This document shows, piece after piece, positions 1-39,381 of a stretch of 64,000 bases of DNA (the first letter of the stretch is position 1; each line of letters begins with the position of its first letter). A program made the translations under genes and the position numbers. Location: the sequence record OR496884.1; one strand, given 5' to 3'. The notes beneath the pieces are model-generated. The model was not told the DNA's origin, did no database searches, and saw only the letters and a list, made by a program, of their open reading frames with translations.

Positions 1-2
1 TA

Positions 3-34
3 TACCTACCTAGCTCAAGTGAGCTAGGTAGGTA
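3..34. terminator. 14-bp perfect hairpin downstream of tailspike 1
   Basis: tacctacctagctc-aagt-gagctaggtaggta; T-rich tail with TATGTT follows on + strand. Confidence 0.75.
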
Positions 35-44
35 GTTTTATGTT

Positions 45-1817
45 TTATTCATCAAGACCTAAACGACTTGAAACTTCTGCAACTACAGTTACTTGGAGTG
101 TTTTTGTTCCAGAGTTATTTAAATTAACATTAATCGAAACTTTATCGGAAACAGCATTACTCGGAGTGATACTATTAAAATCAATTCCGTAGGTTCCGTA
201 TTTCCCACTAAAATCTAATGCAACAGTGTTTCCAACAACACGATACATCCCAGTTACTTTAAAACAAGATGTATTGTTACTGTTAGGGTCCCTAATCATT
301 ATCCAAAGTGAAACACCTCTGAATGATTGTGTTCCAGCATCGGGGATTGCGAGAGAAATGACGCCATTATCGCCAGCCGCGATCGAGCCACTATATTTGC
401 TGGAATAAACATATTTACCTGGAAGATCCAAATAGTTAGGATCGACTCTCAGCAAATTACCTAAATGTCGACTATCACTTGCGCCATTAAGTGTTGTATT
501 ATCGTTTCCGTATTCAATGACTTTACCACCTGAACCAGAAATAACAATTTGACGATTAACCCTGGACTGGTTATTTCTAAATAAATGATTAGCGGTTGCA
601 TGACGGACTGCCGCGATTGCACTACCGGATTCACCGTTAAGACTAACATTTTGGACTACAACACGTTCAGCGGTTTCATCCATGAAAATATCATGAGCGC
701 CAGCACCCCCACCTGTTAATGTAATTCCGTTAATATTAATACTTTTGTGTTTAGACCCTATTGCCAGTTCACCAAATTTGGTAATGGAAATACGATCAGC
801 AACACCACCGGAAATATTGATGTTATCTGTATCATTATGTTCGGCAGTAATTAAAATACGATCTTTAACAACACAGTCAGAAACAGATACGTTTGCGGTA
901 TCATCAATCCAAAGTTGTTTACCAAACGCACAAGCATCTACAGCTGCATAAGAAACTTTGTTGTTTTCAATTTCAAGTGAACCGTAGCTGTTGTTTTCAT
1001 CGTAACAACCTTGAACAATAATGAATCCATTACCATTGATAAAGTTGTAACTGGTTGCGTTCTGACCGTTATGAGTGGTACACCCAATACACTTAGCGTT
1101 TGTAATGCCGGTGTGTTGGAAGTGTCCCGCATTTTTACCGACAGGTGCAATTGATGTACACCCTAATAACAATGTATTTTTAACAACACGATTAGTCGGA
1201 TCGTCATCAGTTGAATAATAACCTTTCCCCCTAAAATCGGTTGAGTAAAAGAACCCTTCAAAACGATTATACAGAATCTTAATATCTTCGTAATCTGCAA
1301 CATCCTCATATGCAATCACTTGGAAAGCACGAGAAGAGCTAGAAAAGTTTTTAGATGTTTGTGTCCCAAGTAACATAGAAGTGAATTTAGATGTTTTAAG
1401 TCTAAATCCGTTATGCGTTAATGCAGCGTCTCCCGTTAATATAATTGGTTTAGAAATAGTTACTTTATCAAAAGTAAACGGTCCACCAATTAAACTTAAC
1501 GTCCCGCCACTAGGTGTCTCATCAATTGCTTGTTGAAGAAGTGCTGTAACATCTGATCCGTCAGTTGCAGGACGGTAATCATTAAACGATCTATAATCTC
1601 TTAAAACAAATCGACCATCATGTTCCCTAAGAACATCACTTAATAAGTTTTGTTTTAATTCTACTATTAATTTAGAGAGCGCATCAAACGTAGGTCTCTC
1701 CACACCGAATCGATCAATCCAACTTGTTAGAGTTGAATTTAACGCTTTATCTAAGTTCCCTGCGTTGAAGAACAAGTCTGTCATCGCAGTAGAACCAATA
1801 GGATTGTTGCTACCCAT
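45..1817 (-). CDS. Tailspike / polysaccharide depolymerase 1 (beta-helix, pectate-lyase-like)
   Basis: Start moved to ATG 1817 (GAGG RBS). N-terminal anchor MGSNNPIGSTAMTDLFFNAGNLDKAL...WIDRFGVER; then DxTxxLQxAID motif and N/D/G-rich beta-helix repeats. Confidence 0.8.
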   Translation of the reverse strand: MGSNNPIGSTAMTDLFFNAGNLDKALNSTLTSWIDRFGVERPTFDALSKLIVELKQNLLSDVLREHDGRFVLRDYRSFNDYRPATDGSDVTALLQQAIDETPSGGTLSLIGGPFTFDKVTISKPIILTGDAALTHNGFRLKTSKFTSMLLGTQTSKNFSSSSRAFQVIAYEDVADYEDIKILYNRFEGFFYSTDFRGKGYYSTDDDPTNRVVKNTLLLGCTSIAPVGKNAGHFQHTGITNAKCIGCTTHNGQNATSYNFINGNGFIIVQGCYDENNSYGSLEIENNKVSYAAVDACAFGKQLWIDDTANVSVSDCVVKDRILITAEHNDTDNINISGGVADRISITKFGELAIGSKHKSININGITLTGGGAGAHDIFMDETAERVVVQNVSLNGESGSAIAAVRHATANHLFRNNQSRVNRQIVISGSGGKVIEYGNDNTTLNGASDSRHLGNLLRVDPNYLDLPGKYVYSSKYSGSIAAGDNGVISLAIPDAGTQSFRGVSLWIMIRDPNSNNTSCFKVTGMYRVVGNTVALDFSGKYGTYGIDFNSITPSNAVSDKVSINVNLNNSGTKTLQVTVVAEVSSRLGLDE

Positions 1818-1883
1818 AACCAACCTCAAGTGTTTTGTCTAATAACAAATGATCTTATTACAAAACAAGTTAATAAATAATGT

Positions 1884-1915
1884 AACTTCTCCTAGGAATT
1901 ACCCTAGGAGAAGTT
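1884..1915. terminator. 13-bp hairpin between tailspikes 2 and 1
   Basis: aacttctcctagg-aattac-cctaggagaagtt. Confidence 0.7.
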
Positions 1916-1924
1916 TTAGTCTAA

Positions 1925-3688
1925 TTAACTAGGTTTTGTTTTACCAACAAATCGTCCCAATGTAGTTATTTCAAAAATGGCATTAACTTGATCAAATTCA
2001 GTGACAGTATTTTCCGCCCATAAATTCAAAACCAAATTGTTCCCTGATTTTATACATTCGTACCTTACTACAATTCTGGTTCCGGTTTGATTATTAAATC
2101 CTTCGACAATTGTTCCTAAAGTTCCAGAATTAGAACTTATATCAAATTGAATATGTGCATTTTTGATAAAGGACCCGGCTGTATCCACACCAGAAATTTT
2201 TATGTTAATGTGTGCATAACAATAAACATATGTAGTAGCAAAATTATGTATTTCCAAACAAGGAACTTTTGTCATCCCAAGTAGATCAAGTTTCTTACCA
2301 AAAATAACTTTTTCGCCACCTAAATTTGTATCGACGTCTAATAAAACTGGATAGCGTGAAACCTTAGAAATTAACTCCTCAGAACTAATTCTCTTGGTAT
2401 ACAAAATACTCTTACCATCAACAGAATACAGTTGAAGTTTCTTTCTGGAAAAGTTTTCAACCTGTGTTAATTCCCAATCTTCAGTTCCGGTATGTGTATG
2501 ACCTTTGACGTCGAAATAGAATGCCTTTGGACCCATGTCAATTAAGTATAAAGGTCCAGGTGTTTCAGCTGTTTTACCAAGGTTTGTTTTAATATTTTCA
2601 AATGTCCAGTTAGTACATTGACCTTGATAACCTGCTATTACTTTATTGGATATAGACTTTCCGCCAAAGAACTTTGGTGTTCCTGTAAATGAGACATTCC
2701 CCTTTGTGTGAGTAGAACTATCGATTACAGCAATACCGGGTTGTTCAAAATACGGATTATGGAAATTTAAATCAAATATTCGGGCGCCAATAGAAACTGA
2801 ATTAGGAGAAGCAAATTCGCAATCAGTAAAACGGATACCTTGCATCCCTAAAGAAAGCGGTAAAGTGGGTTCAACAAATTCGATATCCCATTCCGTGGCA
2901 TGTGAGAACCGGCAACTAGTCCAAATGTTTAAATTACTGAAATCGGTAATTCTTAAATTGATTCTGTTTTTTCTGTACCAAACAGATTTAGTATGGCACC
3001 AGTAACAGCCGGTGACGTCAGTAGTCCCGATGCCATCTTGTTGAGCTATATCAAAGCCTTCAATAATCAATTCTTCTAAATTATCCCACCACGCTTCTCC
3101 GCGATGAAGTCCGATGCCTTTATTATTCGCACCAAGCAATGTTAGCTTTTTAATGCTTGTGTGATACTGACCAGTATTATTTCCGATTATTGCGTCATTT
3201 CTTGATTTTAATAAAACCTTTTCGTACATTATTGCAGGTGTTGCTAAATCGGTATTTTCCCAATATAGTTCGGTTGCATATTGTCCAACACCTTCAATGT
3301 GTACACCAGCCCTTCTTTTTATTGTTGTCGAAAAACGATAACGCTCTCCCTCAAGAATAATTGAAGACCCATAAGGTAATGAAGAAATAACAGCGTTAAT
3401 AACAGGACCGTAATCTAAAACAGCTGCAAAATAAGGAATAAACTTTTTAACATCTAAAACTCGTTTTACAGTAACATCACCGTGTCCTATTTTATCTGAT
3501 CCTAAGGGACCTGAAATATTATTGATTAAATCAGTAACATTTCTTTCCATGTAAGAGTACGTAATACGCTGAACACCAAATCTATCTGTCCAAATATTTG
3601 CATCAGAATGCATTGCCTTATCTAAATTGGCAGCGTTTAGGAATAACTCATTCATTCCATTACTGCCAATAGGCGGAATACTACTCAT
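1925..3688 (-). CDS. Tailspike / polysaccharide depolymerase 2
   Basis: Same anchor (PPIGSNGMNELFLNAANLDKAM...WTDRFGVQR); beta-helix start ERYRFSTTI...VHIEGVG...TELY. Confidence 0.78.
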   Translation of the reverse strand: MSSIPPIGSNGMNELFLNAANLDKAMHSDANIWTDRFGVQRITYSYMERNVTDLINNISGPLGSDKIGHGDVTVKRVLDVKKFIPYFAAVLDYGPVINAVISSLPYGSSIILEGERYRFSTTIKRRAGVHIEGVGQYATELYWENTDLATPAIMYEKVLLKSRNDAIIGNNTGQYHTSIKKLTLLGANNKGIGLHRGEAWWDNLEELIIEGFDIAQQDGIGTTDVTGCYWCHTKSVWYRKNRINLRITDFSNLNIWTSCRFSHATEWDIEFVEPTLPLSLGMQGIRFTDCEFASPNSVSIGARIFDLNFHNPYFEQPGIAVIDSSTHTKGNVSFTGTPKFFGGKSISNKVIAGYQGQCTNWTFENIKTNLGKTAETPGPLYLIDMGPKAFYFDVKGHTHTGTEDWELTQVENFSRKKLQLYSVDGKSILYTKRISSEELISKVSRYPVLLDVDTNLGGEKVIFGKKLDLLGMTKVPCLEIHNFATTYVYCYAHINIKISGVDTAGSFIKNAHIQFDISSNSGTLGTIVEGFNNQTGTRIVVRYECIKSGNNLVLNLWAENTVTEFDQVNAIFEITTLGRFVGKTKPS

Positions 3689-3779
3689 AGATTAAACTCC
3701 TATTAACTGTTTTACTCAGACGGTATTACAAACGATCCACTTGACATTATGATAGTTCCAGTTTAAATAAAAAAAAAAT

Positions 3780-3819
3780 AAAAGTATTCTACTTCCCAGT
3801 TGGGAAGTAGAATACTTTT
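3780..3819. terminator. 19-bp perfect hairpin with long T tract on - strand
   Basis: aaaagtattctacttccca-gt-tgggaagtagaatactttt; A-run at ~3769-3778. Confidence 0.8.
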
Positions 3820-3833
3820 TACATAGACCGTTA

Positions 3834-4466
3834 TTAATTATAACTACAAATCCTACTTAACAAATCAATATGATTTAAATAAGCAGCTTGATTCATGTGA
3901 CATTTATAACTTGTTACTTCATTATACATCAACACCCTACTATCAAAACCCCTTACTTCATTTTTAGATCCAAAAGGATTATCATCAATCAATAAAATTC
4001 TTGAACTAGGATACATTTTTTCTAAATAGCCCAATTTATCTTTATTGATTTCATGATCAATAGAATGTATCATATCAAACTTATTTTCCAACCCATGTTT
4101 CTTTAGATAATTATAAGTACTCATCCAAGCCTCTATATTGTCGCCTCTATGAGTACAAATAACAATCTTTATACTGTTCCCAAAATGAACTCTAGCTCCA
4201 TCCAATACTCCAACTAAATTTCTTAATAACTCACTTGGTTGCGCTTCATTCATATACTCTCGTTTTTCTATTACTTCTTTTAAAACAATTTGTTTCAAAT
4301 CCCCGGTATAATCACTAAAATGAACAAATGGATTCTCTGTTAACCACACTGACTCTTCTAGCAAAAAGTTATTAAGACAATAGTGTAAAGTTCTTTTATA
4401 AACTTCATTGTGAGTATTACACAATGTATCATCCATATCAAATGCCAAAATCATATCGTGATGCAT
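3834..4466 (-). CDS. HAD-superfamily phosphatase, 5'(3')-nucleotidase-like
   Basis: Motif I AFDMDDTL, motif II ICTHRG, motif IV LIDDNP. Confidence 0.75.
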   Translation of the reverse strand: MHHDMILAFDMDDTLCNTHNEVYKRTLHYCLNNFLLEESVWLTENPFVHFSDYTGDLKQIVLKEVIEKREYMNEAQPSELLRNLVGVLDGARVHFGNSIKIVICTHRGDNIEAWMSTYNYLKKHGLENKFDMIHSIDHEINKDKLGYLEKMYPSSRILLIDDNPFGSKNEVRGFDSRVLMYNEVTSYKCHMNQAAYLNHIDLLSRICSYN

Positions 4467-4497
4467 AGTAACTACTAAAAATAATTACAAGTATTAA

Positions 4498-4517
4498 TTA
4501 CGCAGTGATAATGTCTA
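4498..4517 (-). promoter_or_regulatory. Candidate phage early-type promoter
   Basis: - strand TAGACATTATCACTGCGTAA, 16/20 identical to the element at 16589-16608; 41 nt upstream of the HAD gene. Confidence 0.5.
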
Positions 4518-4577
4518 CTTGATCCAAAATGGATATTAAATATTTTGGATTTAACTGTATAAACTAAGGAATTAGTA

Positions 4578-5522
4578 ATGAACGTTAATATTGATAACCT
4601 TGAACACGTATTTCAAACATTGAATGGATTTGAATCGTTAAGTTCTGGTGATACAACTTCTCCAGATTCTATTTATGCAAAAACAGTTTTAAAGTTAAAT
4701 GGGGTAGATTTTAAAGGCAGAGAAGGTTCTGAAAGTTTTATATCTTCTTTAAAAGCCGGTGCTAAAAAAGTTTATGAAATGATTAAAAACTTTATTAAGG
4801 CTGTTAGAGATTTCTTTTTTGGCAGTAAGGGGCCCAAACAAACTAAAACTATTAATGACGCCATTAAAAACACGCAAAATAATAGTAAAGAAATAATCAG
4901 TAAAAAGAATAATAACAGTTTCGATGAAACAGAGATAAGTGCACTTAGTGCCTATAAAACAGAAAAAGAACGTATCCAAAAATTAATGAATAATGAAAAA
5001 ATTAAACTTGAAACTTACAACAGCACGACATTTTTACTAAAATTTAGCGATAGCATTTGGACTGCTGGGATTGCCGGTACAAGGTTGAGTGAGATCCCTG
5101 GAATTTCGATATCTGACTTAAAATCTACGGCTGCACGCCTAGAAGATATAAACACAGCAATTGGATTTATATCCGAGAAGCAATCAGCTAAACATAACTT
5201 TTACACTAATCAAGAGCGTGTAAGTATTTTTGATACCATTCCGCCACTTGTTGAATTGCAAAAATTGTTTAATGAGATGAGGACTGTCGCTTCTAATGCT
5301 CTAGCGACGGTTACTAAAGATCTTGAACATAACAATGAACTAGCAAATAAACAAGAAAATAGTGATAGTGTTGAATTAAAATATGCCGCTGAAAAGGTTA
5401 GGAGATTGTGTAACAAGATGGTGACTGCGTCTAATAAATTAACTGAATTGATTAAACATTGCGATAATAAAATTATTAAAATTAATCAAGTTATGGAAGC
5501 AGTGAAAGAGCTAACTTCTTAA
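4578..5522 (+). CDS. Probable internal head (ejection) protein, phiKZ-like family
   Basis: N-terminal G-x-E motifs (NGFESL, GREGSESF) followed by amphipathic FISSLKAGAKKVYEMIKNFIKAVRDFF and a helical body; pattern resembles cleaved giant-phage head proteins. Confidence 0.55.
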   Translation: MNVNIDNLEHVFQTLNGFESLSSGDTTSPDSIYAKTVLKLNGVDFKGREGSESFISSLKAGAKKVYEMIKNFIKAVRDFFFGSKGPKQTKTINDAIKNTQNNSKEIISKKNNNSFDETEISALSAYKTEKERIQKLMNNEKIKLETYNSTTFLLKFSDSIWTAGIAGTRLSEIPGISISDLKSTAARLEDINTAIGFISEKQSAKHNFYTNQERVSIFDTIPPLVELQKLFNEMRTVASNALATVTKDLEHNNELANKQENSDSVELKYAAEKVRRLCNKMVTASNKLTELIKHCDNKIIKINQVMEAVKELTS

Positions 5523-5534
5523 CGACAGTCGCGT

Positions 5535-5602
5535 TGGGAAATATTTTTAATATTTCCCAGATACAAAAATCCCTACCTACCCAATGGGTAGGTAGGGATT
5601 TT
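5535..5602. terminator. Tandem hairpins at a convergent junction
   Basis: tgggaaatatt-ttt-aatatttccca (5535-5559) and aaaatccctacctaccca-a-tgggtaggtagggatttt (5566-5602). Confidence 0.75.
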
Positions 5603-5606
5603 ATCG

Positions 5607-5696
5607 TTAGTGGAAGTAATACTTTTGTTGTACATTTCCGGCTTTAAAGAAAAGATCTGGTATTGTTGTTGACCCAATAGGGTTAGTACTACTCAT
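5607..5696 (-). pseudogene. Truncated fifth tailspike gene (anchor only, 29 aa)
   Basis: Hand translation MSSTNPIGSTTIPDLFFKAGNVQQKYYFH*; AGGAG RBS intact; matches tailspike 1 NPIGST..DLFF.AGN; below ORF-track cutoff. Confidence 0.85.
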
Positions 5697-5709
5697 TTAG
5701 GTCTCCTAA

Positions 5710-5735
5710 TAAATGGGGTAAAATCCCCCCATTTA
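5710..5735. terminator. Hairpin after tailspike 3
   Basis: taaatgggg...ccccattta (9-bp stem). Confidence 0.55.
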
Positions 5736-5738
5736 AAA

Positions 5739-7676
5739 TTATAGTTTTTTACCTTTTATCCATCTTACTGCCGATGCCGAACTTACAGAAATTATTTTTA
5801 ACGTAAATTCATCTATTACATCGACTCTAACAACGCCGCCATCTATATGAGGAAATGTAATATAATCACCTACTCTAAAACCGGTTGCTCTTGAATAAGG
5901 ATAACCCTCGTGCGACATGAATTGTCCATTTCCTACTGTACCGATACCTACAATAATGGAATCAAACTCAAAAACAGAACAAGGTAAAGTAATCAAGGTA
6001 TTAGGAGTAAAATCACCTTGGTTAGTCAGATTCTGTATCCCATTGATAGTGTACCCTGTTTCGGTTAGAATTGTTGAAAGGTATTTTCTGTTTGGTGGGA
6101 CGGTGGGACCAAACCTATTAAAGTCCATCCTGACGTTATCGCCTTTAGAAAGACAACGTATAGCAGCAAAGGTCAAACCAATTTCGTTGATAAAATTATC
6201 ACCAATATAAACATTTGGTTTTGCATCTACACCCGCTTCTAAACGGATGACATCACGGTCACCGTCAATCCCGCAATTATAGAATTTATTTTTGGTTAAT
6301 TCAAGATAATCAGCATCTGGACCAATTAACAACGCGGTTTTATTAACATTTCTAAAAATGTTATTTTCAGTATATACTCGACTTGCTTTACTAATATACA
6401 TTCCACCAGAAAGAAAAAGACCTTCATCTGGGTTAGATATCATGCTATCTATCATGTTATTAAATAGAATAATGTCTTCAGATGGATACGCATTGGGAAC
6501 ATAATTATTTACTACAATTGAATTTCCGCCATTCAAATTGGAGACTTTCGCCCCGCTGCCGTCGTAATCATACAAAATTTTGTTAATCCCGGCTACAAGA
6601 TCTTTACAGGAATCAATCACTAACCCTCGTTGAAATGCCCCTCTGGTACGATTGTTTAAGACAATAGAATCATGTAAATTTGTACACTTTATTGGATAAA
6701 TCGTTCTATTAATTTCAAGATTAATGAAATTAATTTTTGTATGTGGTTTGAGACGATCTGGATTAGCCGCGTGCGAACCAACGCCTCCATGGCACATGTC
6801 AAATCGACTATTGGTTATTAAAATATTATTGCAAGGTGTTCCGTCCCAGGGCGGTCCTGCAGGAGCCCCAGCTTGTGATGAATAATCTATCTGTATTGCT
6901 TCATACCCATAAACGGTTGATAGGTCTAGATGGAAATTTCCAAAAAATCCGCAATTATCAACAAGAACATTTTCGCAAGAATTAAATTCAAAAATATGAG
7001 TTTCACGGCCATTATAAAAGTCTATACCAAAAACATAAATATTTTTAGAGTGTACAGGCGTAAAAAACCCTCGGTAACCCGTCGAAATCTTATCACCACC
7101 TAAGAAAATTTTTGCACGTCCATTAAAACATACAAAATTTATTCTATTTCCTAAATCGTATTCCCCAATTATATTCGTGGTTCCGCCGTCAAAAGCAACG
7201 GCCATGCCACCGACATTACAATCAAGTTCAGTACCGGTTTCTAACACCCAGGATGTTGAGTAAGGAATAAATAATCTCCCGGAAATTTTATATTTCCCAT
7301 ATGGGAAATATATTGATCTCCAAACACCTGCAGCCAAAATAGCTTTTTGTATTCCATCAGTAGAATCAGTTTCACCTGTTGGATCTACACCTGGAAATTG
7401 TAATACAGATACTTTTTCTTTAAACATTAATTCTATCGGTACTACTTTTGAACCTTCGCCTTCTTGTTGGAAACCTAAAAGTTCACTTCCCAGTTTAGTT
7501 GAAAAATCATTTTTTAAATTTAAAACTTCTCTTTCAACCAAATGGTACGTTTTTCTTTGTGTACCGAATCGATCCATCCAAAAATCTTCATTACTATGCA
7601 GCGCACGATCCAAATTTCCGGCGTTTGTTAGTAAATCAGACATTGTGCTAGACCCTATTGGGTTTTGACTACTCAT
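5739..7676 (-). CDS. Tailspike / polysaccharide depolymerase 3 (pectate_lyase_3-like)
   Basis: Anchor MSSQNPIGSSTMSDLLTNAGNLDRAL...WMDRFGTQR; GVDPTGETDSTDGIQKAI...IYFPYGKYKIS; EAIQID...DGTPCNNI...GVGSH. Confidence 0.82.
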   Translation of the reverse strand: MSSQNPIGSSTMSDLLTNAGNLDRALHSNEDFWMDRFGTQRKTYHLVEREVLNLKNDFSTKLGSELLGFQQEGEGSKVVPIELMFKEKVSVLQFPGVDPTGETDSTDGIQKAILAAGVWRSIYFPYGKYKISGRLFIPYSTSWVLETGTELDCNVGGMAVAFDGGTTNIIGEYDLGNRINFVCFNGRAKIFLGGDKISTGYRGFFTPVHSKNIYVFGIDFYNGRETHIFEFNSCENVLVDNCGFFGNFHLDLSTVYGYEAIQIDYSSQAGAPAGPPWDGTPCNNILITNSRFDMCHGGVGSHAANPDRLKPHTKINFINLEINRTIYPIKCTNLHDSIVLNNRTRGAFQRGLVIDSCKDLVAGINKILYDYDGSGAKVSNLNGGNSIVVNNYVPNAYPSEDIILFNNMIDSMISNPDEGLFLSGGMYISKASRVYTENNIFRNVNKTALLIGPDADYLELTKNKFYNCGIDGDRDVIRLEAGVDAKPNVYIGDNFINEIGLTFAAIRCLSKGDNVRMDFNRFGPTVPPNRKYLSTILTETGYTINGIQNLTNQGDFTPNTLITLPCSVFEFDSIIVGIGTVGNGQFMSHEGYPYSRATGFRVGDYITFPHIDGGVVRVDVIDEFTLKIISVSSASAVRWIKGKKL

Positions 7677-7692
7677 ATGTCATCCTCTTAAA

Positions 7693-7722
7693 GTTAGTAT
7701 CCCTTACATAAGGGATACTAAC
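7693..7722. terminator. 14-bp hairpin between tailspikes 4 and 3
   Basis: gttagtatccctta-ca-taagggatactaac. Confidence 0.7.
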
Positions 7723-7728
7723 ATTTTG

Positions 7729-9594
7729 TTATATTAGTGCTTTAATACTAATATTAGTATTTGAAAAACTGGTTATGATTTCACATCCAGCATTCCCGGT
7801 TACATATTGTACCCGATAAACCTTTCCTGCTAAAAGTTTAATCGCTATATATGGAATAGGTAGCGTGTTAATTCCTGAAAATACTCTGGTATCAAAGAAA
7901 GTTTGTAAAACAAAATTATCAGTTTCATTGAATAATCGAATCGCCACTCTGGTCCCATCGGCTGGGACATTGACTGTAAATATTCCGCTAAATGAATATA
8001 TACAATCTTCTATGGGGACTATTCCTACATCTACCCATTCCCCGTTTAAATTTTTACCAACTTGTGTAAAGGGGATGTTGACAAAATTTCCAGTTGCGGT
8101 AGGGGTGAAATTTGCTGAAAATCCAAGTTGGATATCTGAGATAGGTGTATTTCCTTGATTAGGAACTGCAGACTTTAATTCAACAGCTGAAAGTATTCTC
8201 CCGCCCGCATTGGAAAGTATGTGGGGTTTTGATCCAAACTCACACATAGAGTCTATTTCAATACGCATTTCGGTATTTCTGGAAATAGACATTGCATAAG
8301 TAAGTGCGTCAGATATATTCTTGTTACCTTTAAATCTGAGTAACTTACAAACGGATCCAGCTATATTGTAACTTGTAGTATAAGAATTTCCCATGTTACT
8401 ATGGGATGCGGGATCTAATGTGTTATAGAAGAAATCCACATTACATCTTTGGGGGTTATTTACCGATCCATATTTTTCAACAACAAATCTTCCAGCTGTG
8501 TTACCAATGAATGTGATGTCTTTCATTTCAAACGTGGAATACTGACTTCCTGTTGAAACTCTTAATACTCGAGCAAAACAAGAAGATACCTTGACACCGC
8601 TAGAAGAAGAAATCCAAATATCATGTTCAAAATTGCAATTGATAATCCGGCCATTACAATTTTCGGAATCTTCTATCTGTGCACCCGCCTCAACGTTTGT
8701 CAACGTCTGGGCTAATCCCGTTTCTGAACAACCATCTATCAAGATTGTTTTACATCTGGCGGCACCAAAAACACTAGTATTTCTTCCACCGGTAACATCA
8801 GAATGCAGGTATTTTACATCGTCAACACTAAAACATAAAAAATGCCCGCCGTTGACTTCATTGGATGCAGTTGATTTACAAGAATCAATAATAACTCTTT
8901 TAGTGGGGTAACCCGTTAATGCGGTTATTGAGGTTCCTGCCCGCACTGCGTAAAAGCCGCCTTTAAATTCTGTACCAAGACACTTTACTTCATCAATACC
9001 ATCTATGTCATTAGGTTCTGCTCGAATTAAAACACCTCTTGTTGTTGATTCTAAGGTCAAACCAAATACATGAGTAATTTTACCTCTAGCGTGAACGTGA
9101 GGAAGACCGGTCACGACACCAGCAAAAACAATTTTAGTTGTTTTTGGGCCGTGGATTATCGTATTTTGTAAATTTAAAATAGTACCGTTAACTAAATAGT
9201 AGTTAGCTGGATTTTTTGGTTCTGGAAAATAAATAGGTCTTCCGGTAGCAAGGGCTAACTTTAAAACAGTACTAATATCAGTTTGATTGGCACGAGCGTT
9301 ATAAGGCGCGTCTGTTATATCTATGGCATTTGCCAATTTAAATCCAACTGTTGCAGGTAGATGTTCTAAATCGCTACTAAATCCAATTTTTCCAGCACCA
9401 GCACCTTGTGCATATGAAAATTCAAAATCATTAACTTTACGTTCCATGCGAGAATAAGTAATGCGCTCTACCCCGAATCTATCGGTGAACGTATCTTCTT
9501 CACTATTCATTGCAAAATCTAAATTTGTTGCATTTAAATAGGCGTCACGGAAGTCTGGACTTCCTATGGGATTACCCGTGCTACTCATGTCCAT
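7729..9594 (-). CDS. Tailspike / depolymerase 4 with C1q-like C-terminal domain
   Basis: Anchor TGNPIGSPDFRDAYLNATNLDFAMNS...FTDRFGVER; beta-helix; C-terminus FSANF...IPFTQVGKNLNG...IYSFSG...KLLAGKVYRVQ resembles the C1q/TNF fold. Confidence 0.8.
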   Translation of the reverse strand: MDMSSTGNPIGSPDFRDAYLNATNLDFAMNSEEDTFTDRFGVERITYSRMERKVNDFEFSYAQGAGAGKIGFSSDLEHLPATVGFKLANAIDITDAPYNARANQTDISTVLKLALATGRPIYFPEPKNPANYYLVNGTILNLQNTIIHGPKTTKIVFAGVVTGLPHVHARGKITHVFGLTLESTTRGVLIRAEPNDIDGIDEVKCLGTEFKGGFYAVRAGTSITALTGYPTKRVIIDSCKSTASNEVNGGHFLCFSVDDVKYLHSDVTGGRNTSVFGAARCKTILIDGCSETGLAQTLTNVEAGAQIEDSENCNGRIINCNFEHDIWISSSSGVKVSSCFARVLRVSTGSQYSTFEMKDITFIGNTAGRFVVEKYGSVNNPQRCNVDFFYNTLDPASHSNMGNSYTTSYNIAGSVCKLLRFKGNKNISDALTYAMSISRNTEMRIEIDSMCEFGSKPHILSNAGGRILSAVELKSAVPNQGNTPISDIQLGFSANFTPTATGNFVNIPFTQVGKNLNGEWVDVGIVPIEDCIYSFSGIFTVNVPADGTRVAIRLFNETDNFVLQTFFDTRVFSGINTLPIPYIAIKLLAGKVYRVQYVTGNAGCEIITSFSNTNISIKALI

Positions 9595-9676: not shown

Positions 9677-10027
9677 ATGGATCAATTTCAATTTAAAAAT
9701 CCAAAGTTAGAATTTATTGTTGAGACAGGTAAATTTAGATTACTGGAAGATTATGTTACTCCAGAGTGTACAGTTCCCAAAGGCTTTGTTACTAATGGTG
9801 CGTCTTCGGGTAGAGTATTACAAACTTTCTTTCCATCTTATCATAAATATTTTCCAGCAGCAATCGTGCACGACTATATGTATGCAACGGGAATAGTTTC
9901 TAAAGAAGAAGCTGATAAGTTATTTAAATACAACATTGAAGTTAGATTAAAAATGAGTGCTAAATATTACGTCCCAATGTACTACGCGGTAAAGTTATTT
10001 GGTAAGTCGCATTACAAACAAAAATAA
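9677..10027 (+). CDS. DUF1353 family protein
   Basis: VPKGFVTNGAS...AAIVHDYMY...SKEEADKLF signature. Confidence 0.8.
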   Translation: MDQFQFKNPKLEFIVETGKFRLLEDYVTPECTVPKGFVTNGASSGRVLQTFFPSYHKYFPAAIVHDYMYATGIVSKEEADKLFKYNIEVRLKMSAKYYVPMYYAVKLFGKSHYKQK

Positions 10028-10036: not shown

Positions 10037-10071
10037 AGTAGCTAGAGCACCCATTGGGTGCTCTAGCTACT
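10037..10071. terminator. Bidirectional hairpin, 16-17 bp stem
   Basis: agtagctagagcaccca-t-tgggtgctctagctact between convergent genes. Confidence 0.8.
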
Positions 10072-10080: not shown

Positions 10081-10644
10081 TTAACGTTGACGTAGTTTTA
10101 TACATTGATTTTTGTACCTTTCAATCCAGTCTGGTGAATCAAACTTTTCTTCATTATCCAGAATGTGTTTTAATTCAACTGGGAACTGAACATTGTATTT
10201 GGATATTACTCCTTTAATAAAATACGCTCCAAAAACATCGCAAGGCATCCAGATACCGCATGCTAAATGGAAAGAGACTCTTGTTTTTGGTTGTATTGTT
10301 TCATTGGTATGAACTTGTAACCAAGTGGCTTCAGCACCTTCTTTAGGATACCCAGAAGGATGAACTGTGTCATAATCAATATTGTTATGACTTAACCAGC
10401 AGTGGTTATGAATCATACAAATGTCAAGTTCTATTCCAAATCCAAATTTAAGAACGTGATAAGCAGCAATTGCCATCATCCCGCAATCACCTGAATTAAT
10501 TTGTTTCACAACATCTTCATCAGGGATTTTCTTATCAGCGTTATAAATTTTCCAACATTCAATCAGATCTTTAAAAACACGTTCGATAGCCTTTGCTTCA
10601 CAGAAGTTTTTGTAACTACCGTATTGTGTTAAATAAAAGCCCAC
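10081..10644 (-). CDS. Hypothetical protein with transglutaminase/papain-like Cys-His-Asp pattern
   Basis: INSGDCGMMA...HNHCWL...IDYD; GTG start with AAGGA RBS. Confidence 0.55.
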   Translation of the reverse strand: MGFYLTQYGSYKNFCEAKAIERVFKDLIECWKIYNADKKIPDEDVVKQINSGDCGMMAIAAYHVLKFGFGIELDICMIHNHCWLSHNNIDYDTVHPSGYPKEGAEATWLQVHTNETIQPKTRVSFHLACGIWMPCDVFGAYFIKGVISKYNVQFPVELKHILDNEEKFDSPDWIERYKNQCIKLRQR

Positions 10645-10687
10645 GGTGATTTCCTTTAAATAAATGTTTTCTAAGAAACTAATTGAA

Positions 10688-11251
10688 TTAAATTGTCAAT
10701 TCAGTATGATGATTTTCGGGATTCATGATCATCGCCATTGATTTAGTTATTCGAATTAATTCTTCAACATTCAATACAGTTTTATATCCATTTTTAACTT
10801 CGTATTCAAAAATAATTCCTGACTCATCAGTGACTGTAATTTTTATTCCATTTTTGTCATATACAAAAGTGTAACCGACAATATCATTATGACCATCATC
10901 TTTATCCAAAAATTCAATCGACAATTTTGAAAGAATTTGAATAAAAATATTATTAACATACGGTTCCAATCGGTTTTCTCGAACAGACACTGCGTTAAAA
11001 ACAGGTATTGTCGCAATCAATTTATTTGAAATGCTGGTTCCATTAGGAAACGTTTCAGTATTCAGATGAACTAGAATTTTGGAAATTCCAAAAGAATGAA
11101 TCAAAGAAAAATTTAGACTAACAGTACTGGTAACGGTATCACCCAATACTGTTTTAGTTTCAAACACGGCTGTTTGATTTTCACACATGAATTTCAAAAT
11201 CTTAACGACGCTTGGACGAACTTGGAGAAGATCATAAACATTTTTAAACAT
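10688..11251 (-). CDS. Hypothetical protein
   Basis: 187-aa ORF with AAGGA RBS, co-oriented with neighbours. Confidence 0.6.
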   Translation of the reverse strand: MFKNVYDLLQVRPSVVKILKFMCENQTAVFETKTVLGDTVTSTVSLNFSLIHSFGISKILVHLNTETFPNGTSISNKLIATIPVFNAVSVRENRLEPYVNNIFIQILSKLSIEFLDKDDGHNDIVGYTFVYDKNGIKITVTDESGIIFEYEVKNGYKTVLNVEELIRITKSMAMIMNPENHHTELTI

Positions 11252-27734: not shown

Positions 27735-27766
27735 AACCTCTACCTCCCACTTGGGAGGTAGAGGTT
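27735..27766. terminator. 15-bp bidirectional hairpin
   Basis: aacctctacctccca-ct-tgggaggtagaggtt. Confidence 0.8.
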
Positions 27767-27769: not shown

Positions 27770-30700
27770 TTAACGTGTGTAAGTTGGAAACGTTGGTTTG
27801 GGAAGTACCCAACTAGTTGTTCCTGTATCCCAGTTAAAGAAAGTAGCAACGCGGTTCATATACCAGTTTGATAAATCTTGGTTTAAATTACTTGCACCAA
27901 AGAAACAATCATTCATGGTATAAACATGACCCATATCCCAAAATTCTAATCCTGGATAAGAAACAGCAACGGAGTTTCTAAACACCCCATTAAAGTTTGC
28001 AATGTTTTTAGAAAGTGTAGCTGTGATTTTAAACCCTTCCGAGTTACTAAAATCTAATTCAGTTACACGAGAACCGATAGTCAGCAGTTCTGTTAAACCT
28101 AATCCCCACTTTAATACTGAAACACCAAAAATATCAACGGTGACAATACCAGTGTGAGCACCAGGAATGGTGAAACTATTTAAACCAGCTAATTGATAAA
28201 TTGTTCCATTAACTAACAAATAGGGGGTTCCACCTACCCTGTTAGTAATTGGAATTACTCTTCCTTTAGCGGTATCCCAAAGTAGCCTGGTTGCAACTGT
28301 TTGTTTAAAGAAACGGTTGACAGGTAATCCACTTCCAGGTTTCCCTAAAAACACCGGGAACGAACTACCATCACTGGTTACGTTCATCCGTTTGCGAGCG
28401 ATAACAGGCAATAATGAATTACGCCACCCAGATTGATCTTGGTAACTGAATTCTGTACCGTTTATAAACCCTGCCGGAACGGAACCAAGATGCGGTTCTA
28501 TTTCATAACCAGTTGGATTATTGTAACGACCATAGGCAATCAAGTCGTCACCAATCTGTGTGACAAACAACTCGTCGTAACCAAAGAACTCCTCTATCCT
28601 TGCCTTTACTGGTTTTTTAACCAAGGTGTTTTTTCCATTCACCATGATCACACCACCGACCGGATAAAGTGTGAATCCTTCAGTAGTACCCATCAACCCA
28701 CCAGTCAACGTCAGGAAACCGTATTCCCTAGTAAAGACGCCGTAGTTGTTAGGTGTTTTACGAAACGCCCACATTCCCTTTGATAACATTACAGGACTTT
28801 GATAGTTGATATGAAGTCTATGAGGAAGTTTAGTTCCATAACAAATTTCTTTATCGTAATCTATCTGGTATCCAAGGACAGGATCGTACGGAAAAACAGG
28901 ATCAACGGAATCTAACTTAGGACCAAATGTAAATGTTCCTGTTATTGGATTATGAGTGATTTGTAATTCAACATAAAAGTTATTAAACGGAGCTACATTA
29001 AGCATGACATCATACTTAACTTGATTTAACGCATCTGTCATTTTCATGATGTAAACATCTTGGGATTTAAAACTATCGTACCCAAGAATTGCACCGTGGT
29101 TTATTTGAAGCGTTGATTTCTTGTTAACGTTCATGGTATTAACGGTAATACTGTTAGCTACTGTACCTTGGGGCTTAATTGTTTTACGACCAGACCCGTC
29201 GGTATGAACATAACAATTTTTAATGATTCCGTAATAACAGTCCTTTTCATTACTTGGGTAATCTGCGCTTCCAACGCACTGATTCATCCAAAACAATGTA
29301 GATTTGAAAAAGAAGAACACCTTATGTTGCTTGAACCAACTGCCTGCATTTTTAGCGATCCAATTTAATATATCCTCATGAATGGAGATTGGATTACTAA
29401 AGGTAATTGGATTTTCTAGGTTATTGGGATCAAGTTCATAATTGAGATAACTGGTAAATCCATTACCATTATTGAACACCATGTTGTTGATGTTAATGGT
29501 GCTGGATAAATCATCGTTCTCAATTAAGAAAGACGGAACATCTTCCATCCCGCCAGTAATCCAATTGACGTTTTCTGTTTTAGGACCTAAATAACTTCCG
29601 TAAGGATTTCCTTGCAAATAGTTAGTCCCTGCGTCAACTGTTACCAACCCCCACCGATAACGGTTGCGATAATCTCGACTATAAGTTAAATAAGTAATCT
29701 TTAACTTAGTAGCAGCACCAGGATCTGGGACTGGGACAGGATCATCGGTTAAACCATCATATCGAGGCCAGCGGTTATTCATTGTGATATCAAGAATAGC
29801 ACGTTCTTGTTCAGTAGCAGTCCCTACAGCGACTTTGACGGGAATATGCCTGAGGTGATCACCATACATGCAATCTTGTTCAATATTAGATTGCGCAACG
29901 TAATTGTATTTAGTTGGCTTAGGGAATGGTTTATTGCCATTATTAATAAAAGCAAGACCAGACGTAATTGAATGGTCGTAACTTCCGATATACTGGCGGT
30001 TATAAAACGTATACGTTTTTAAATGTCCGCCAGCCGGATCAAAGACGCCATCTTGACAAAGTGGGTGTTCAGGTTGTTCTTTAACATGAGGAGTGTAACT
30101 TTTAAACAAACCAGATTCAATTAAATCCCAGTTGTCGTTTAAGGTCTGTTTTGCTTGTTCAAAAACACTATCTGTGATCACGTTTACTGACATCTGTTTG
30201 GTAGTGTCATTGAATGTAAATTCTAAACGTGAATCAAGATAACCGTGCCAGTATGCGGTTTTATCTTTATTGAACCAACCAAAATACAACCGAATAGCGC
30301 CACGATGTCTAAGTTTCATCTCCCAACCAAATGTTAACCGTTTCAGTCGTCTAACATCTAGCGATTGAAAGAACAACTCAGTTTCTTCAGCAGGTAGATT
30401 AAACAAGTTTTTAAAAGGGATGACTAAATCAATCTGACCATTTCCGGTATAATCAACAGCTTGTAATTTAGAGCCTACTGGAACGGTAATTTCATTAGTT
30501 TCGTATTTAACGGGATCTTTGGTAATAAATTCGGCTAGTCTGTTAGGGGGACCTTCCTGAAGATCAATTGCCCAAGGATTTAATTTCATTCCATTTAAGG
30601 ATAATCTCAAATGGGGAGATGAAGTAGATTCCCCTGGATAACTTCCTTTTATTAACTTTAAACTAAATTGATACAGGTAATCTTCAGCGCTTTCAAATAT

Positions 30701-31699
30701 ACCGTCAAAAGGAACAGAACTTCCTGTTGTTTCCATTACATCGAACGGAAGAATGTTTTTGTTAAAAGAACGTAAACAAACTTTGTTCCCTTCCATATAA
30801 GAGAAAGCCGAAACTCCAAATAGATTCTCGGAAGTTTTCATAACAGTTCCAAGACTACCTGGGATTCGCCATCCTCTTAACTGAGCGGGTCTAGAACGAC
30901 GTGTATCAATGCGTTTTGCATAAGCCCGTACTTTGGTACCACCTCGAGATGTTTGGACCTCTGGTGCGCTTCCAGTGGGTGTAGCGGTATATCTACCTAA
31001 TTCTGGAGATTGATTAATGTTGGGGAAAATATGCATCCCGGTTTGCGTTGCAAAACACCAAGCAGTTTCACCAATAAACGCTTTAGGATCACTTGGACTT
31101 TGTACCAATTCACCTTTATAAAAGTCAAAATGCCACTGAGGAACTTCTCCGAGATTCCCGCCGGATGCAATAGGGAGAGAACGAGCCGGAATATAAGAAC
31201 GTGGGTCAACTTTAACGCGTTCGTCAATAATAGCAGAAAGCCCTGCTGGATGACAATATAAATCGTTAGCATCACCCTCTCTGTGTTGTTGAACAGTTGC
31301 CATCCCCCAGTTGTCTTTTTTACCAAGACCTACCGTGGTTTTAGTCTCACCATGAACGGGACCAACTTTGTTAGTGTGCTGAAGAAGATGTTCATCAACT
31401 AACGCACCCATTTCATCTATTTTGGTAGCGACAACGTTCCTAACTTCTTCTATGATTTCTTCTTGGGTAATTTCAACAACTTCTCCAGGAGCCGGAATAG
31501 GAACTTCTGGATCAGTAATCCCATCTTCGCGAGGCCAGGTATTGTTGACAATGATATCCAAAATAATACGATCATTGTCAGATGACCCAGAAGACTTTTC
31601 TTGTATTTTCCTATCTACCCGGATAAACGCATCCAACACAACACCTATTGGATTAGTACGTTCCACAGGTACAAGGGGTTTATCTTTATCAATTTTCAT
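27770..31699 (-). CDS. Large tail/baseplate fibre protein with C-terminal DUF285-like repeat
   Basis: 1309 aa; paralog segment HGETKTTVGLGKKDNWGMATVQQ; two ILDI..NN.WPR motifs; C-terminal FWDMGHVYTMNDCFFGASNLNQDLSNW. Confidence 0.7.
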   Translation of the reverse strand: MKIDKDKPLVPVERTNPIGVVLDAFIRVDRKIQEKSSGSSDNDRIILDIIVNNTWPREDGITDPEVPIPAPGEVVEITQEEIIEEVRNVVATKIDEMGALVDEHLLQHTNKVGPVHGETKTTVGLGKKDNWGMATVQQHREGDANDLYCHPAGLSAIIDERVKVDPRSYIPARSLPIASGGNLGEVPQWHFDFYKGELVQSPSDPKAFIGETAWCFATQTGMHIFPNINQSPELGRYTATPTGSAPEVQTSRGGTKVRAYAKRIDTRRSRPAQLRGWRIPGSLGTVMKTSENLFGVSAFSYMEGNKVCLRSFNKNILPFDVMETTGSSVPFDGIFESAEDYLYQFSLKLIKGSYPGESTSSPHLRLSLNGMKLNPWAIDLQEGPPNRLAEFITKDPVKYETNEITVPVGSKLQAVDYTGNGQIDLVIPFKNLFNLPAEETELFFQSLDVRRLKRLTFGWEMKLRHRGAIRLYFGWFNKDKTAYWHGYLDSRLEFTFNDTTKQMSVNVITDSVFEQAKQTLNDNWDLIESGLFKSYTPHVKEQPEHPLCQDGVFDPAGGHLKTYTFYNRQYIGSYDHSITSGLAFINNGNKPFPKPTKYNYVAQSNIEQDCMYGDHLRHIPVKVAVGTATEQERAILDITMNNRWPRYDGLTDDPVPVPDPGAATKLKITYLTYSRDYRNRYRWGLVTVDAGTNYLQGNPYGSYLGPKTENVNWITGGMEDVPSFLIENDDLSSTININNMVFNNGNGFTSYLNYELDPNNLENPITFSNPISIHEDILNWIAKNAGSWFKQHKVFFFFKSTLFWMNQCVGSADYPSNEKDCYYGIIKNCYVHTDGSGRKTIKPQGTVANSITVNTMNVNKKSTLQINHGAILGYDSFKSQDVYIMKMTDALNQVKYDVMLNVAPFNNFYVELQITHNPITGTFTFGPKLDSVDPVFPYDPVLGYQIDYDKEICYGTKLPHRLHINYQSPVMLSKGMWAFRKTPNNYGVFTREYGFLTLTGGLMGTTEGFTLYPVGGVIMVNGKNTLVKKPVKARIEEFFGYDELFVTQIGDDLIAYGRYNNPTGYEIEPHLGSVPAGFINGTEFSYQDQSGWRNSLLPVIARKRMNVTSDGSSFPVFLGKPGSGLPVNRFFKQTVATRLLWDTAKGRVIPITNRVGGTPYLLVNGTIYQLAGLNSFTIPGAHTGIVTVDIFGVSVLKWGLGLTELLTIGSRVTELDFSNSEGFKITATLSKNIANFNGVFRNSVAVSYPGLEFWDMGHVYTMNDCFFGASNLNQDLSNWYMNRVATFFNWDTGTTSWVLPKPTFPTYTR
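29716..29805 (-). repeat. ILDI-NN-WPR peptide repeat, copy B
   Basis: ERAILDITMNNRWPRYDGLTDDPVPVPDP; 24 nt (29774-29797) identical to 31816-31839. Confidence 0.9.
31487..31573 (-). repeat. ILDI-NN-WPR peptide repeat, copy A
   Basis: DRIILDIIVNNTWPREDGITDPEVPIPAP, about aa 43-71 of the 1309-aa protein. Confidence 0.9.
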
Positions 31700-31720
31700 A
31701 AGCTGTTCTCGATTAAGTAA

Positions 31721-31752
31721 AAAAAGATGGAAGGTTTCCCCTCCATCTTTTT
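31721..31752. terminator. Hairpin between tail genes
   Basis: aaaaagatgga...tccatcttttt. Confidence 0.6.
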
Positions 31753-31758
31753 CAATAT

Positions 31759-35637: not shown

Positions 35638-35647
35638 AAGAAATAAA

Positions 35648-35679
35648 CTGGAAGTACGATCAAAAGATCGTACTTCCAG
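35648..35679. terminator. 14-bp hairpin
   Basis: ctggaagtacgatc-aaaa-gatcgtacttccag. Confidence 0.75.
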
Positions 35680-35690
35680 AAGGATATTAA

Positions 35691-39329: not shown

Positions 39330-39346
39330 TTGTTAATCTCACAAAG

Positions 39347-39376
39347 AGAAAGAGAGATCCGAAGATCTCTCTTTCT
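39347..39376. terminator. 13-bp hairpin, TTCG loop on - strand
   Basis: agaaagagagatc-cgaa-gatctctctttct. Confidence 0.78.
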
Positions 39377-39381
39377 GTCAA

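What the first reader, a model, noticed from the sequence alone, without database searches (positions are those of the whole stretch)
1..9594. Modular array of four tailspikes with one shared anchor and different catalytic/C-terminal modules
Seen: 45..1817, 1925..3688, 5739..7676 and 7729..9594 all start with [NP]PIGSxxxx[DE]xxxNAxNLDxA...[WF]xDRFGxxR and then diverge. Each gene is followed by its own hairpin. Established: beta-helix tailspikes set capsule/O-antigen specificity, and some jumbo phages of encapsulated enterobacteria (e.g. Klebsiella phiKp24) carry many on branched fibres. Inference: a multi-serotype toolkit of exchangeable cassettes whose anchor resembles that of small-phage/prophage tailspikes. 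The array may continue left of base 1.
Basis: partly seen in the sequence, partly recalled or inferred. Interest (0 to 1): 0.7.

Follow-up and report, generated by a model that had tools for sequence, protein, structure and literature searches.

The report
Jumbo phage tailspike set, shared anchor
The window is the start of the published Aeromonas jumbo phage AerS_266, and the four genes are real tailspikes that share a ~55-residue attachment peptide joined to unrelated sugar-cutting bodies, which is ordinary phage modularity already noted by the phage's authors.

Summary
Four minus-strand genes (45..1817, 1925..3688, 5739..7676, 7729..9588) share an N-terminal anchor of about 55 residues and then diverge. 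Each is followed by a hairpin.

The window is bases 1-64000 of Aeromonas phage AerS_266 (OR496884.1), a nucleus-forming jumbo phage. Its 2023 paper already reports the shared N-termini of gp1, gp2 and gp5 and reads them as attachment sequences.

New here:
- gp6 carries the anchor too. So does a fifth spike outside the window, next to the terminase gene, and a 29-codon relic at 5610..5696.
- The anchor is homologous (E 1e-10) to residues 6-59 of Shigella siphophage Sf11 tailspike gp13. In PDB 9OCC that segment, as a trimer, wraps one adaptor helix of a tail protein.
- The anchors fall into five classes kept at the same gene positions in relatives, while the bodies are replaced. Swap scars are visible.
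- The bodies are beta-helical. They recur in Aeromonas and E. coli prophages on four other kinds of N-terminus.
- The array does not continue left of base 1. A convergent adhesin gene lies there.

The docking partner was not found. A multi-serotype role is untested, and the published host range is narrow. Verdict: already known in kind, low to moderate interest.

The parts
3..34 (.). 14-bp perfect hairpin between the stop of gp1 and the convergent adhesin gene at the end of the record; likely a two-way terminator
   Evidence: It is 94-100% conserved in ZPAH34 and L013.
45..1817 (-). gp1 tailspike, 590 aa. Class-4 anchor (residues 1-55 or so, bases 1653..1817) joined to a beta-helix body.
   Evidence: The body from residue 45-89 is 47-59% identical to E. 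coli and Aeromonas prophage tailspikes that carry Head_binding, Tail_spike_N or tail-collar N-termini. The orthologue in L013 is 90% identical.
1884..1915 (.). 13-bp hairpin after gp2
   Evidence: This intergenic stretch plus the gp1 anchor is 75-84% conserved in ZPAH34 and L013.
1925..3688 (-). gp2 tailspike, 587 aa. Class-3 anchor (bases 3524..3688) joined to a beta-helix body and a C-terminal beta-sandwich.
   Evidence: The body from residue 46-54 is about 50% identical to proteins with Head_binding, Tail_spike_N, tail-collar or T7-tail-fibre N-termini. The AF2 model has pLDDT 66.7, and the top Foldseek hits are K2-2 TSP and Acinetobacter phage tailspikes, E 3e-9.
3780..3819 (.). 18-bp hairpin after the HAD-like gene
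3834..4466 (-). HAD-like phosphatase gene lying inside the array; not a spike; absent from the ZPAH34 and L013 arrays
   Evidence: A paralogue lies at record 218639..219283.
4578..5522 (+). gp4, 314 aa, opposite strand. Member of a family with several paralogues in this genome; not a spike. It arrived with the insertion that split the array.
   Evidence: (paralogues at record 70117..71127 and others; its last 55 aa match ZPAH34 gp131).
5535..5602 (.). Two hairpins (11-bp stem at 5535..5559, 17-bp stem at 5566..5602) between gp4 and the relic
5610..5696 (-). Relic of a spike gene: a 29-codon open frame with its own AGGAG and ATG. Its first 23 residues match anchor positions 1-23. The rest of the gene is gone (one truncation).
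   Evidence: hmmsearch E 8.5e-9. Best match is the class-3 anchor of ZPAH34, 18 of 23. The DNA is 76-81% identical to the start of the third spike gene of ZPAH34 and L013.
5711..5734 (.). Short hairpin (8-bp stem) directly after the stop of gp5
   Evidence: Read from the sequence.
5739..7676 (-). gp5 tailspike, 645 aa. Class-2 anchor (bases 7512..7676) joined to a beta-helix body.
   Evidence: Pfam Pect-lyase_RHGA_epim and Beta_helix, both above threshold. PHROG tail spike. PDB 3zpp at E 9e-5. Nearest phage relatives are Bacillus phage tailspikes and pre-neck appendages at 21-29% identity.
7693..7722 (.). 13-bp hairpin after gp6
7729..9588 (-). gp6 tailspike, 619 aa. Class-1 anchor (bases 9424..9588) joined to a beta-helix body (about residues 90-460) and a C-terminal beta-sandwich.
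   Evidence: The AF2 model has pLDDT 74, and Foldseek hits are Depo32, Kp7 gp52, K2-2 TSP, CBA120 TSP2-4 and Sf6 TSP. The body is 60% identical to an A. hydrophila prophage tail-collar fibre and 79% identical to L013's fourth spike, which carries a different anchor class.
9677..10027 (+). DUF1353 gene, divergent from gp6; the conserved left border of the array. PHROG calls the family 'tail assembly chaperone'.
   Evidence: It is 89% identical in ZPAH34 and present at the same place in L013.
10037..10071 (.). 16-bp two-way hairpin after the DUF1353 gene

Best explanation
AerS_266 encodes five receptor-destroying tailspikes: four in this array and one beside the terminase gene at record 152927..155374, outside the window. 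Each has an N-terminal anchor of about 55 residues fused almost directly to a right-handed beta-helix body with a C-terminal beta-sandwich. By homology with Shigella siphophage Sf11 gp13, the three anchors of a spike trimer most likely form a helical bundle around one adaptor helix supplied by a tail or baseplate protein, and that fixes the spike to the virion. This step is inferred. The anchors form five sequence classes. Each class stays at its own gene position in related phages, whereas the body behind it is replaced by recombination at the anchor-body junction or between anchor-coding sequences. Donor bodies circulate among Aeromonas and enterobacterial prophages on other kinds of N-terminus. 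Each spike gene is bracketed by stem-loops and is probably its own transcription unit.
For: Shown:
- The shared anchor is present in four array genes, a fifth gene and a relic.
- The anchor profile hits PDB 9OCC chain G (Sf11 gp13) residues 6-59 at E 1e-10. Those residues were modelled as helices that bundle with one helix of the distal tail protein gp17, and gp13 was found in virions by mass spectrometry (PMC12724387).
- Some relatives' spikes (CF8_0009, ZPAH34 gp134, L013's 905-aa protein) match Sf11 gp13 over about 150-170 residues.
- The anchor family has 1,749 cluster representatives at E<=1e-3, nearly always at the extreme N-terminus of proteins of 500-980 aa.
- Reciprocal best matches between AerS_266 and ZPAH34 follow gene position: 76, 73, 69, 76 and 96%. 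Within-class identity averages 75% against 52% between classes.
- The fifth spike is 94.7% identical to ZPAH34 gp227 over 57 aa and then unrelated.
- The gp6 body is 79% identical to L013's fourth spike, while their anchors are only 54% identical and of different class.
- Swap scars are present: the relic at 5610..5696, and an 84-aa ORF in ZPAH34 that is 86% identical to the last 84 aa of gp1.
- Between phages the array DNA is conserved only at the anchors, short upstream spacers and the terminal hairpin.
- Beta-helix folds are supported.
- The same bodies occur on Head_binding, Tail_spike_N, tail-collar and T7-tail N-termini.
Against: - No homologue of the Sf11 adaptor protein gp17 was found among AerS_266 open frames (best E 0.5), so the socket is unknown.
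- The monomer models give the anchor only moderate (gp6, pLDDT about 60-70) or low (gp2, below 50) confidence.
- No virion proteomics or structure exists for AerS_266 or ZPAH34.
- Class fidelity is not absolute. CF8's terminase-side spike carries a class-4 anchor, and L013 has two class-4 anchors.
- Position-linked conservation could reflect plain vertical descent rather than site specificity.
- The residues that make the Sf11 salt bridges (Arg16, Lys19) are not conserved here.
Confidence: 0.72

Rival explanations
1. The anchors do not plug into a baseplate helix. They plug into another receptor-binding protein, giving a branched fibre as in Klebsiella KP32-type phages (docking peptide on a branching domain), CBA120, or the phiKZ gp131-135 hetero-oligomeric fibre base.
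For: - The same window holds a second fibre set (27770..40146) whose shared N-terminal domain is homologous to phiKZ gp131.
- In phiKZ such paralogues co-assemble through their N-termini and a helical bundle (PMC13250141).
- Three of the AerS_266 proteins are 1,200-1,300 aa, much longer than the phiKZ ones, which leaves room for docking sites.
- Docking-peptide systems are documented (PMC13352976).
Against: - No T4 gp10-like or Tail_spike_N branching domain was detected in the spikes or in the large fibre proteins.
- The only solved homologue of the anchor docks on a tail protein, not on another spike.
Confidence: 0.2
2. All five spikes compete for one kind of site, so particles carry a mixed or variable set. 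The anchor classes are only the trace of old duplications.
For: - Eleven of 45 core anchor columns are invariant in all 16 jumbo-phage anchors compared.
- Classes 2-4 reach up to 71% identity to each other.
- Classes can change place.
Against: - The classes have stayed distinct across three phages whose flanking genes are only 77-91% identical in DNA.
- One of the four class-discriminating columns aligns with Sf11 Lys19, a residue that contacts the adaptor.
Confidence: 0.15
3. The proteins are not virion parts but free enzymes, and the shared N-terminus serves expression or folding rather than attachment.
For: No proteomic or structural data exist for this phage.
Against: - The anchor is conserved as protein across phages with no DNA similarity (Sf11-like and D3-like siphophages and other ~250-kb jumbo phages).
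- Its solved homologue is virion-bound.
- The bodies are homologous to tail proteins of prophages.
Confidence: 0.04

Closest known systems
Shigella siphophage Sf11 tailspike gp13 and its adaptor helix on the distal tail protein gp17 (PDB 9OCC; PMC12724387)
   Same: The N-terminal ~55 residues are homologous (profile E 1e-10). They sit at the extreme N-terminus of a beta-helix tailspike. Some Chaoshanvirus spikes share about 165 residues with gp13.
   Different: Sf11 is a 46-kb siphophage with one spike gene. AerS_266 is a 244-kb contractile-tailed, nucleus-forming phage with five anchor paralogues. No gp17 homologue was found. The four array spikes lack the ~100-residue domain and hinge that follow the anchor in gp13. 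The salt-bridge residues differ.
AerS_266 as published (Morozova et al. 2023, PMC10673249) and its relative ZPAH34
   Same: This is the same sequence. The paper reports the shared N-termini of gp1, gp2 and gp5, their likeness to ZPAH34 receptor-binding proteins, and the reading that they attach the spikes to conserved tail proteins.
   Different: The paper states that gp6 has no similarity to proteins of other Aeromonas phages. Here gp6 carries the anchor (76% identical to ZPAH34 gp133 over the core), and its body matches an A. hydrophila prophage protein at 60%. The fifth spike, the relic, the anchor classes and the link to a solved structure are not in the passages of the paper that were read.
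phiKZ gp131-gp135 fibre paralogues (PMC13250141)
   Same: The design is the same: neighbouring paralogues with a common N-terminus for attachment and different C-termini, in a chimallivirus.
   Different: The N-terminal module is different and much larger (about 250 aa). AerS_266 has that set as well, at 27770..40146. The spike anchor was not detected in phiKZ by tblastn.
Multi-tailspike phages: CBA120/ViI-like TSP1-4, Klebsiella KP32-type two-spike systems, phiKp24
   Same: Several beta-helix depolymerase-type spikes per virion, and bodies exchanged horizontally. The gp2 and gp6 models match their solved structures.
   Different: Those systems attach through Tail_spike_N or gp10-like branching domains, or through a docking peptide on a primary spike. 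None of these was detected in the AerS_266 spikes.

Membership tests
Sf11-gp13-type N-terminal tailspike anchor (no Pfam or NCBIfam model) | Sequence homology to gp13 residues 4-59 | tested here: met
   A profile of the four anchors hits 9occ_G at residues 6-59, E 1e-10. gp2 alone gives E 8e-4. No Pfam or NCBIfam model matches the anchor.
Sf11-gp13-type N-terminal tailspike anchor (no Pfam or NCBIfam model) | Located at the extreme N-terminus of a tailspike or fibre protein | tested here: met
   Nearly all of the 150 listed relatives match from residues 1-8.
Sf11-gp13-type N-terminal tailspike anchor (no Pfam or NCBIfam model) | The trimer of anchors forms a helical bundle with one adaptor helix | not testable with these tools
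   Only monomer prediction was available. The gp6 model shows helices at residues 13-28 and 45-54 at pLDDT about 60-70.
Sf11-gp13-type N-terminal tailspike anchor (no Pfam or NCBIfam model) | A partner protein homologous to the gp17 adaptor | tested here: not met
   phmmer of Sf11 gp17 against all AerS_266 open frames gave a best E of 0.5. A single helix may escape sequence search.
Right-handed beta-helix tailspike (depolymerase-type) | Parallel beta-helix body | tested here: met
   gp5 by Pfam. gp6 and gp2 by AF2 models and Foldseek. gp1 by homologues with PF12708 and a profile hit to beta-helix enzymes.
Right-handed beta-helix tailspike (depolymerase-type) | Homotrimer with glycan-cleaving activity | not testable with these tools
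   No assay or multimer model was available. No catalytic residues were assigned.
CBA120/G7C-type branched tailspike complex | Tail_spike_N (PF18668) or gp10-like branching domains near the N-terminus | tested here: not met
   No such hit in any of the four array spikes or the fifth spike. The domain is present in homologues of the bodies from other phages.
phiKZ gp131-like fibre family | gp131-like N-terminal domain of about 250 aa | tested here: not met
   The spikes lack it. It is found instead in the four genes at 27770..40146.

The most novel reading that the evidence does not exclude
The five anchor classes are addresses. Each class fits its own adaptor helix on the chimallivirus baseplate, so that a plug-and-socket first seen in a small siphophage has been multiplied into a fixed five-socket rack on a jumbo contractile tail. 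The still unmodelled peripheral baseplate of these phages would then contain the sockets.
Probability: 0.3. Interest if true: 0.55.

Novelty: already known. Interest (0 to 1): 0.25.

Why it matters
Receptor-binding proteins decide which bacteria a phage can attach to. AerS_266 is a candidate agent against a fish pathogen. The core observation is published and the modular tailspike principle is textbook, so the finding itself adds little.

Three things are useful beyond it:
- The link between this unnamed but widespread anchor (at least 1,749 protein clusters) and a solved attachment structure.
- The evidence for position-linked anchor classes.
- The fact that how spikes attach to a chimallivirus baseplate is still unresolved in the phiKZ and Goslar structures.

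These give structural biologists a concrete motif to look for.

Tried and rejected
- Direct search for the socket. Sf11 gp17 against all AerS_266 frames found nothing. Pfam, PHROG and PDB scans of the adhesin, the three large tail proteins, the baseplate assembly protein and nine small neighbours of the array gave no branching or adaptor domain.
- DUF1353 as a spike-specific partner. It borders the array in AerS_266, ZPAH34 and L013. It is not next to the anchor-bearing genes in Miami-like phages, and no Sf11-like or D3-like siphophage appears among its 40 listed matches of 52. So it is not a general partner.
- HAD-like gene and gp4 as parts of the spike system. Rejected: both are absent from the arrays of ZPAH34 and L013, and both have paralogues elsewhere in the genome.
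- Hairpins as a special feature of the array, or as shared recombination sites. Rejected: they occur throughout the window and their sequences differ.
- A conserved promoter motif upstream of the spike genes. The alignment showed only the ribosome-binding region.
- Single-sequence PDB searches of the bodies gave little.
- Published proteomics for AerS_266 or ZPAH34. None exists.
Full report
**What the window is.** Bases 1-10000 match Aeromonas phage AerS_266 (OR496884.1, 243,674 bp, genus Chaoshanvirus, host A. salmonicida) at 100% identity from record position 1. Window and record coordinates are therefore the same. The record annotates chimallin, a phage tubulin and phiKZ-like RNA polymerases, so this is a nucleus-forming jumbo phage. 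The four genes are deposited as tail spike proteins gp1, gp2, gp5 and gp6.

**Observation.** The four ORFs are on the minus strand.
- Beyond about residue 55-70 they are unrelated, apart from a distant gp1-gp6 similarity.
- A profile of the four anchors finds only these genes plus one more among all 1,925 open frames of the genome.
- Each gene is followed by a stem-loop. This is a general trait of the genome. The window holds 27 perfect hairpins with a stem of at least 10 bp against about 0.6 in shuffles, and 20 of them lie in the 5% of DNA that is intergenic.
- The start of gp6 is better placed at 9588 than at 9594.

**Prior knowledge.** The 2023 description of the phage says that the first 10 kb is the region least like ZPAH34. 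It says that gp1, gp2 and gp5 share a short similar fragment at their starts, and that these N-termini resemble those of ZPAH34 receptor-binding proteins. It concludes that the spikes are probably attached to conserved tail proteins through these sequences, and it states that gp6 has no similarity to proteins of other Aeromonas phages (PMC10673249). The core of the finding is therefore published.

**What the anchor is.**
- Neither Pfam nor NCBIfam has a model for it.
- The anchor profile hits one solved protein, chain G of PDB 9OCC, at residues 6-59 with E 1e-10. This is tailspike gp13 of Shigella siphophage Sf11.
- In that cryo-EM structure, residues 4-59 were built as N-terminal helices. The three copies of a spike trimer pack around a single adaptor helix of the distal tail protein gp17, giving a helical bundle held by salt bridges. 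gp13 was detected in virions by mass spectrometry (PMC12724387).
- tblastn finds the anchor on tail proteins of several groups. These are Sf11-like 46-48 kb siphophages of Escherichia, Salmonella, Shigella and Klebsiella, D3-like Pseudomonas phages, and jumbo phages of Aeromonas, Klebsiella, Raoultella and Stenotrophomonas.
- In a library of 1.84 billion cluster representatives, 1,749 proteins match at E<=1e-3. The match is almost always at residues 1-8 onward, in proteins of 500-980 aa.

**More members.**
- A fifth AerS_266 protein carries the anchor (E 2.5e-13). It is the annotated polysaccharide-lyase tail spike next to the terminase gene, at record 152927..155374, outside the window.
- Its first 57 residues are 94.7% identical to ZPAH34 gp227 at the same genomic place. 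After that the two proteins have nothing in common.
- Inside the array, between gp5 and gp4, a 29-codon open frame at 5610..5696 keeps a ribosome-binding site, a start codon and the first 23 anchor residues (E 8.5e-9). The rest of the gene is missing, which is one truncation.

**Borders.** The gene order is conserved in two relatives. One is ZPAH34. The other is a 78.7-kb metagenomic contig, L013.
- The order is: DUF1353 gene (divergent), then the spike genes, then a convergent 1,065-aa adhesin-like gene, then nrdB.
- In AerS_266 the adhesin and nrdB genes are the last genes of the record. They are 79% identical in DNA to those of ZPAH34.
- The array therefore ends at gp1, and base 1 is only where the record was opened.

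**Anchor classes.**
- Over a 45-residue core, each AerS_266 anchor is most like the ZPAH34 anchor at the same gene position: 76, 73, 69, 76 and 96%. Paralogues within one phage are 38-56% alike in AerS_266 and 38-69% in ZPAH34.
- With L013 and CF8 added, within-class identity averages 75% (minimum 67%) and between-class identity 52% (maximum 71%). Eleven core columns are invariant in all 16 anchors.
- Four columns are fixed within classes but differ among them. One of these aligns with Sf11 Lys19, a residue that contacts the adaptor helix.
- Fidelity is not complete. CF8's terminase-side spike has a class-4 anchor, and L013 has two class-4 anchors.

**Cassette exchange.**
- Between AerS_266 and ZPAH34 or L013, array DNA is conserved only at the anchors, the short spacers upstream of them and the terminal hairpin. 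The flanks are 77-91% identical.
- The gp6 body is 79% identical to L013's fourth spike, which carries a class-4 anchor only 54% identical to gp6's class-1 anchor.
- ZPAH34 keeps an 84-aa ORF after its last spike that is 86% identical to the C-terminal 84 residues of gp1. This is the leftover of a replaced body.
- The AerS_266 relic sits where the third spike gene starts in ZPAH34 and L013. That fits an insertion that brought gp4, the HAD-like gene and the present gp2.
- In L013 the fourth and fifth spike genes are only 10 bases apart. That fits insertion by recombination between anchor-coding sequences; this reading is inference.

**Bodies.**
- gp5 passes Pfam thresholds for Pect-lyase_RHGA_epim and Beta_helix.
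- The AlphaFold2 model of gp6 (pLDDT 74, above 90 through most of residues 90-460) is a stack of short strands followed by a beta-sandwich. Its best Foldseek matches are Klebsiella depolymerases, CBA120 TSP2-4 and the Sf6 tailspike.
- The gp2 model is weaker (pLDDT 66.7) but matches K2-2 TSP and Acinetobacter phage tailspikes at E 3e-9.
- gp1's homologues carry PF12708. A profile of the gp1/gp6 family hits the first coils of known beta-helix enzymes.
- Whole-chain TM-scores are low (0.2-0.4). The claim is about fold class, not substrate.
- The same bodies occur at 40-60% identity in Aeromonas and E. coli prophage proteins. Their N-termini are P22-type Head_binding, Tail_spike_N, P2-type tail-collar or T7-type tail-fibre domains, and the similarity begins at residues 45-89 of the AerS_266 proteins.

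**What remains unknown.**
- The socket was not found.
- The phiKZ and Goslar virion structures leave the peripheral baseplate and fibres largely unmodelled. They describe other attachment modules: gp131-like N-termini and DUF7941.
- AerS_266 also has the gp131-like set, at 27770..40146.
- There are no proteomics for AerS_266 or ZPAH34.
- The published host range is narrow: 4 of 13 A. salmonicida strains and 0 of 32 other Aeromonas, with small clear plaques. A multi-serotype role is therefore unproven.

**Verdict.** The additions are incremental: the structural homologue of the anchor, the fifth member and the relic, the anchor classes and the swap scars.

I stopped, used none of those letters in any tool or in this report, and relied only on sequences returned by the tools.

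Noticed in passing
window 27770..40146 (-) and 40175..41407 (+): A second, independent 'shared N-terminus, different C-terminus' set. Four neighbouring genes share a ~250-aa N-terminal domain (phrog_2163). The smallest (39382..40146) matches the N-terminus of phiKZ gp131 (E 1e-8). The divergent neighbour sits where gp130 sits in phiKZ. In phiKZ this family forms the twelve peripheral fibres.
   Followed up: partly
window 31759..35625 (product C-end) and 27770..31699 (product residues ~43-69 and ~626-658): A ~30-residue proline-rich motif (I-L-D-I..N-N.W-P-R.D-G.T-D-P-E.P.P) ends one large fibre protein and occurs twice in the next. It may be an inter-protein contact motif.
   Followed up: no
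window 4578..5522 (+): gp4 belongs to a family with paralogues at record 70117..71127 (next to the phiKZ-like internal virion protein gene), 66974..67864 and 205339..206310. Its last 55 residues match a 76-aa ORF beside the DUF1353 gene in ZPAH34. The family therefore appears to move or decay around the array.
   Followed up: partly
whole window, e.g. 3..34, 5566..5602, 27735..27766, 61000..61033: Long perfect intergenic hairpins are very frequent: 27 with a stem of at least 10 bp, 20 of them in the 5% of DNA that is intergenic. Several stems share CTACCT-like words.
   Followed up: partly
window 10081..11251 (-): Two 187-aa genes beside the DUF1353 gene have no DNA counterpart in the ZPAH34 or L013 loci. 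This is a second small insertion at the edge of the array. One matches phrog_6870 (function unknown).
   Followed up: no
L013:2671-13628 (metagenomic relative): This relative has five anchor-bearing genes in the array, one of only 420 aa, plus two small ORFs. The number of spikes in the array varies among close relatives.
   Followed up: partly
L004:16225-16479 (ZPAH34): An annotated 84-aa hypothetical protein is the leftover C-terminus of a gp1-like spike body (86% identical).
   Followed up: yes
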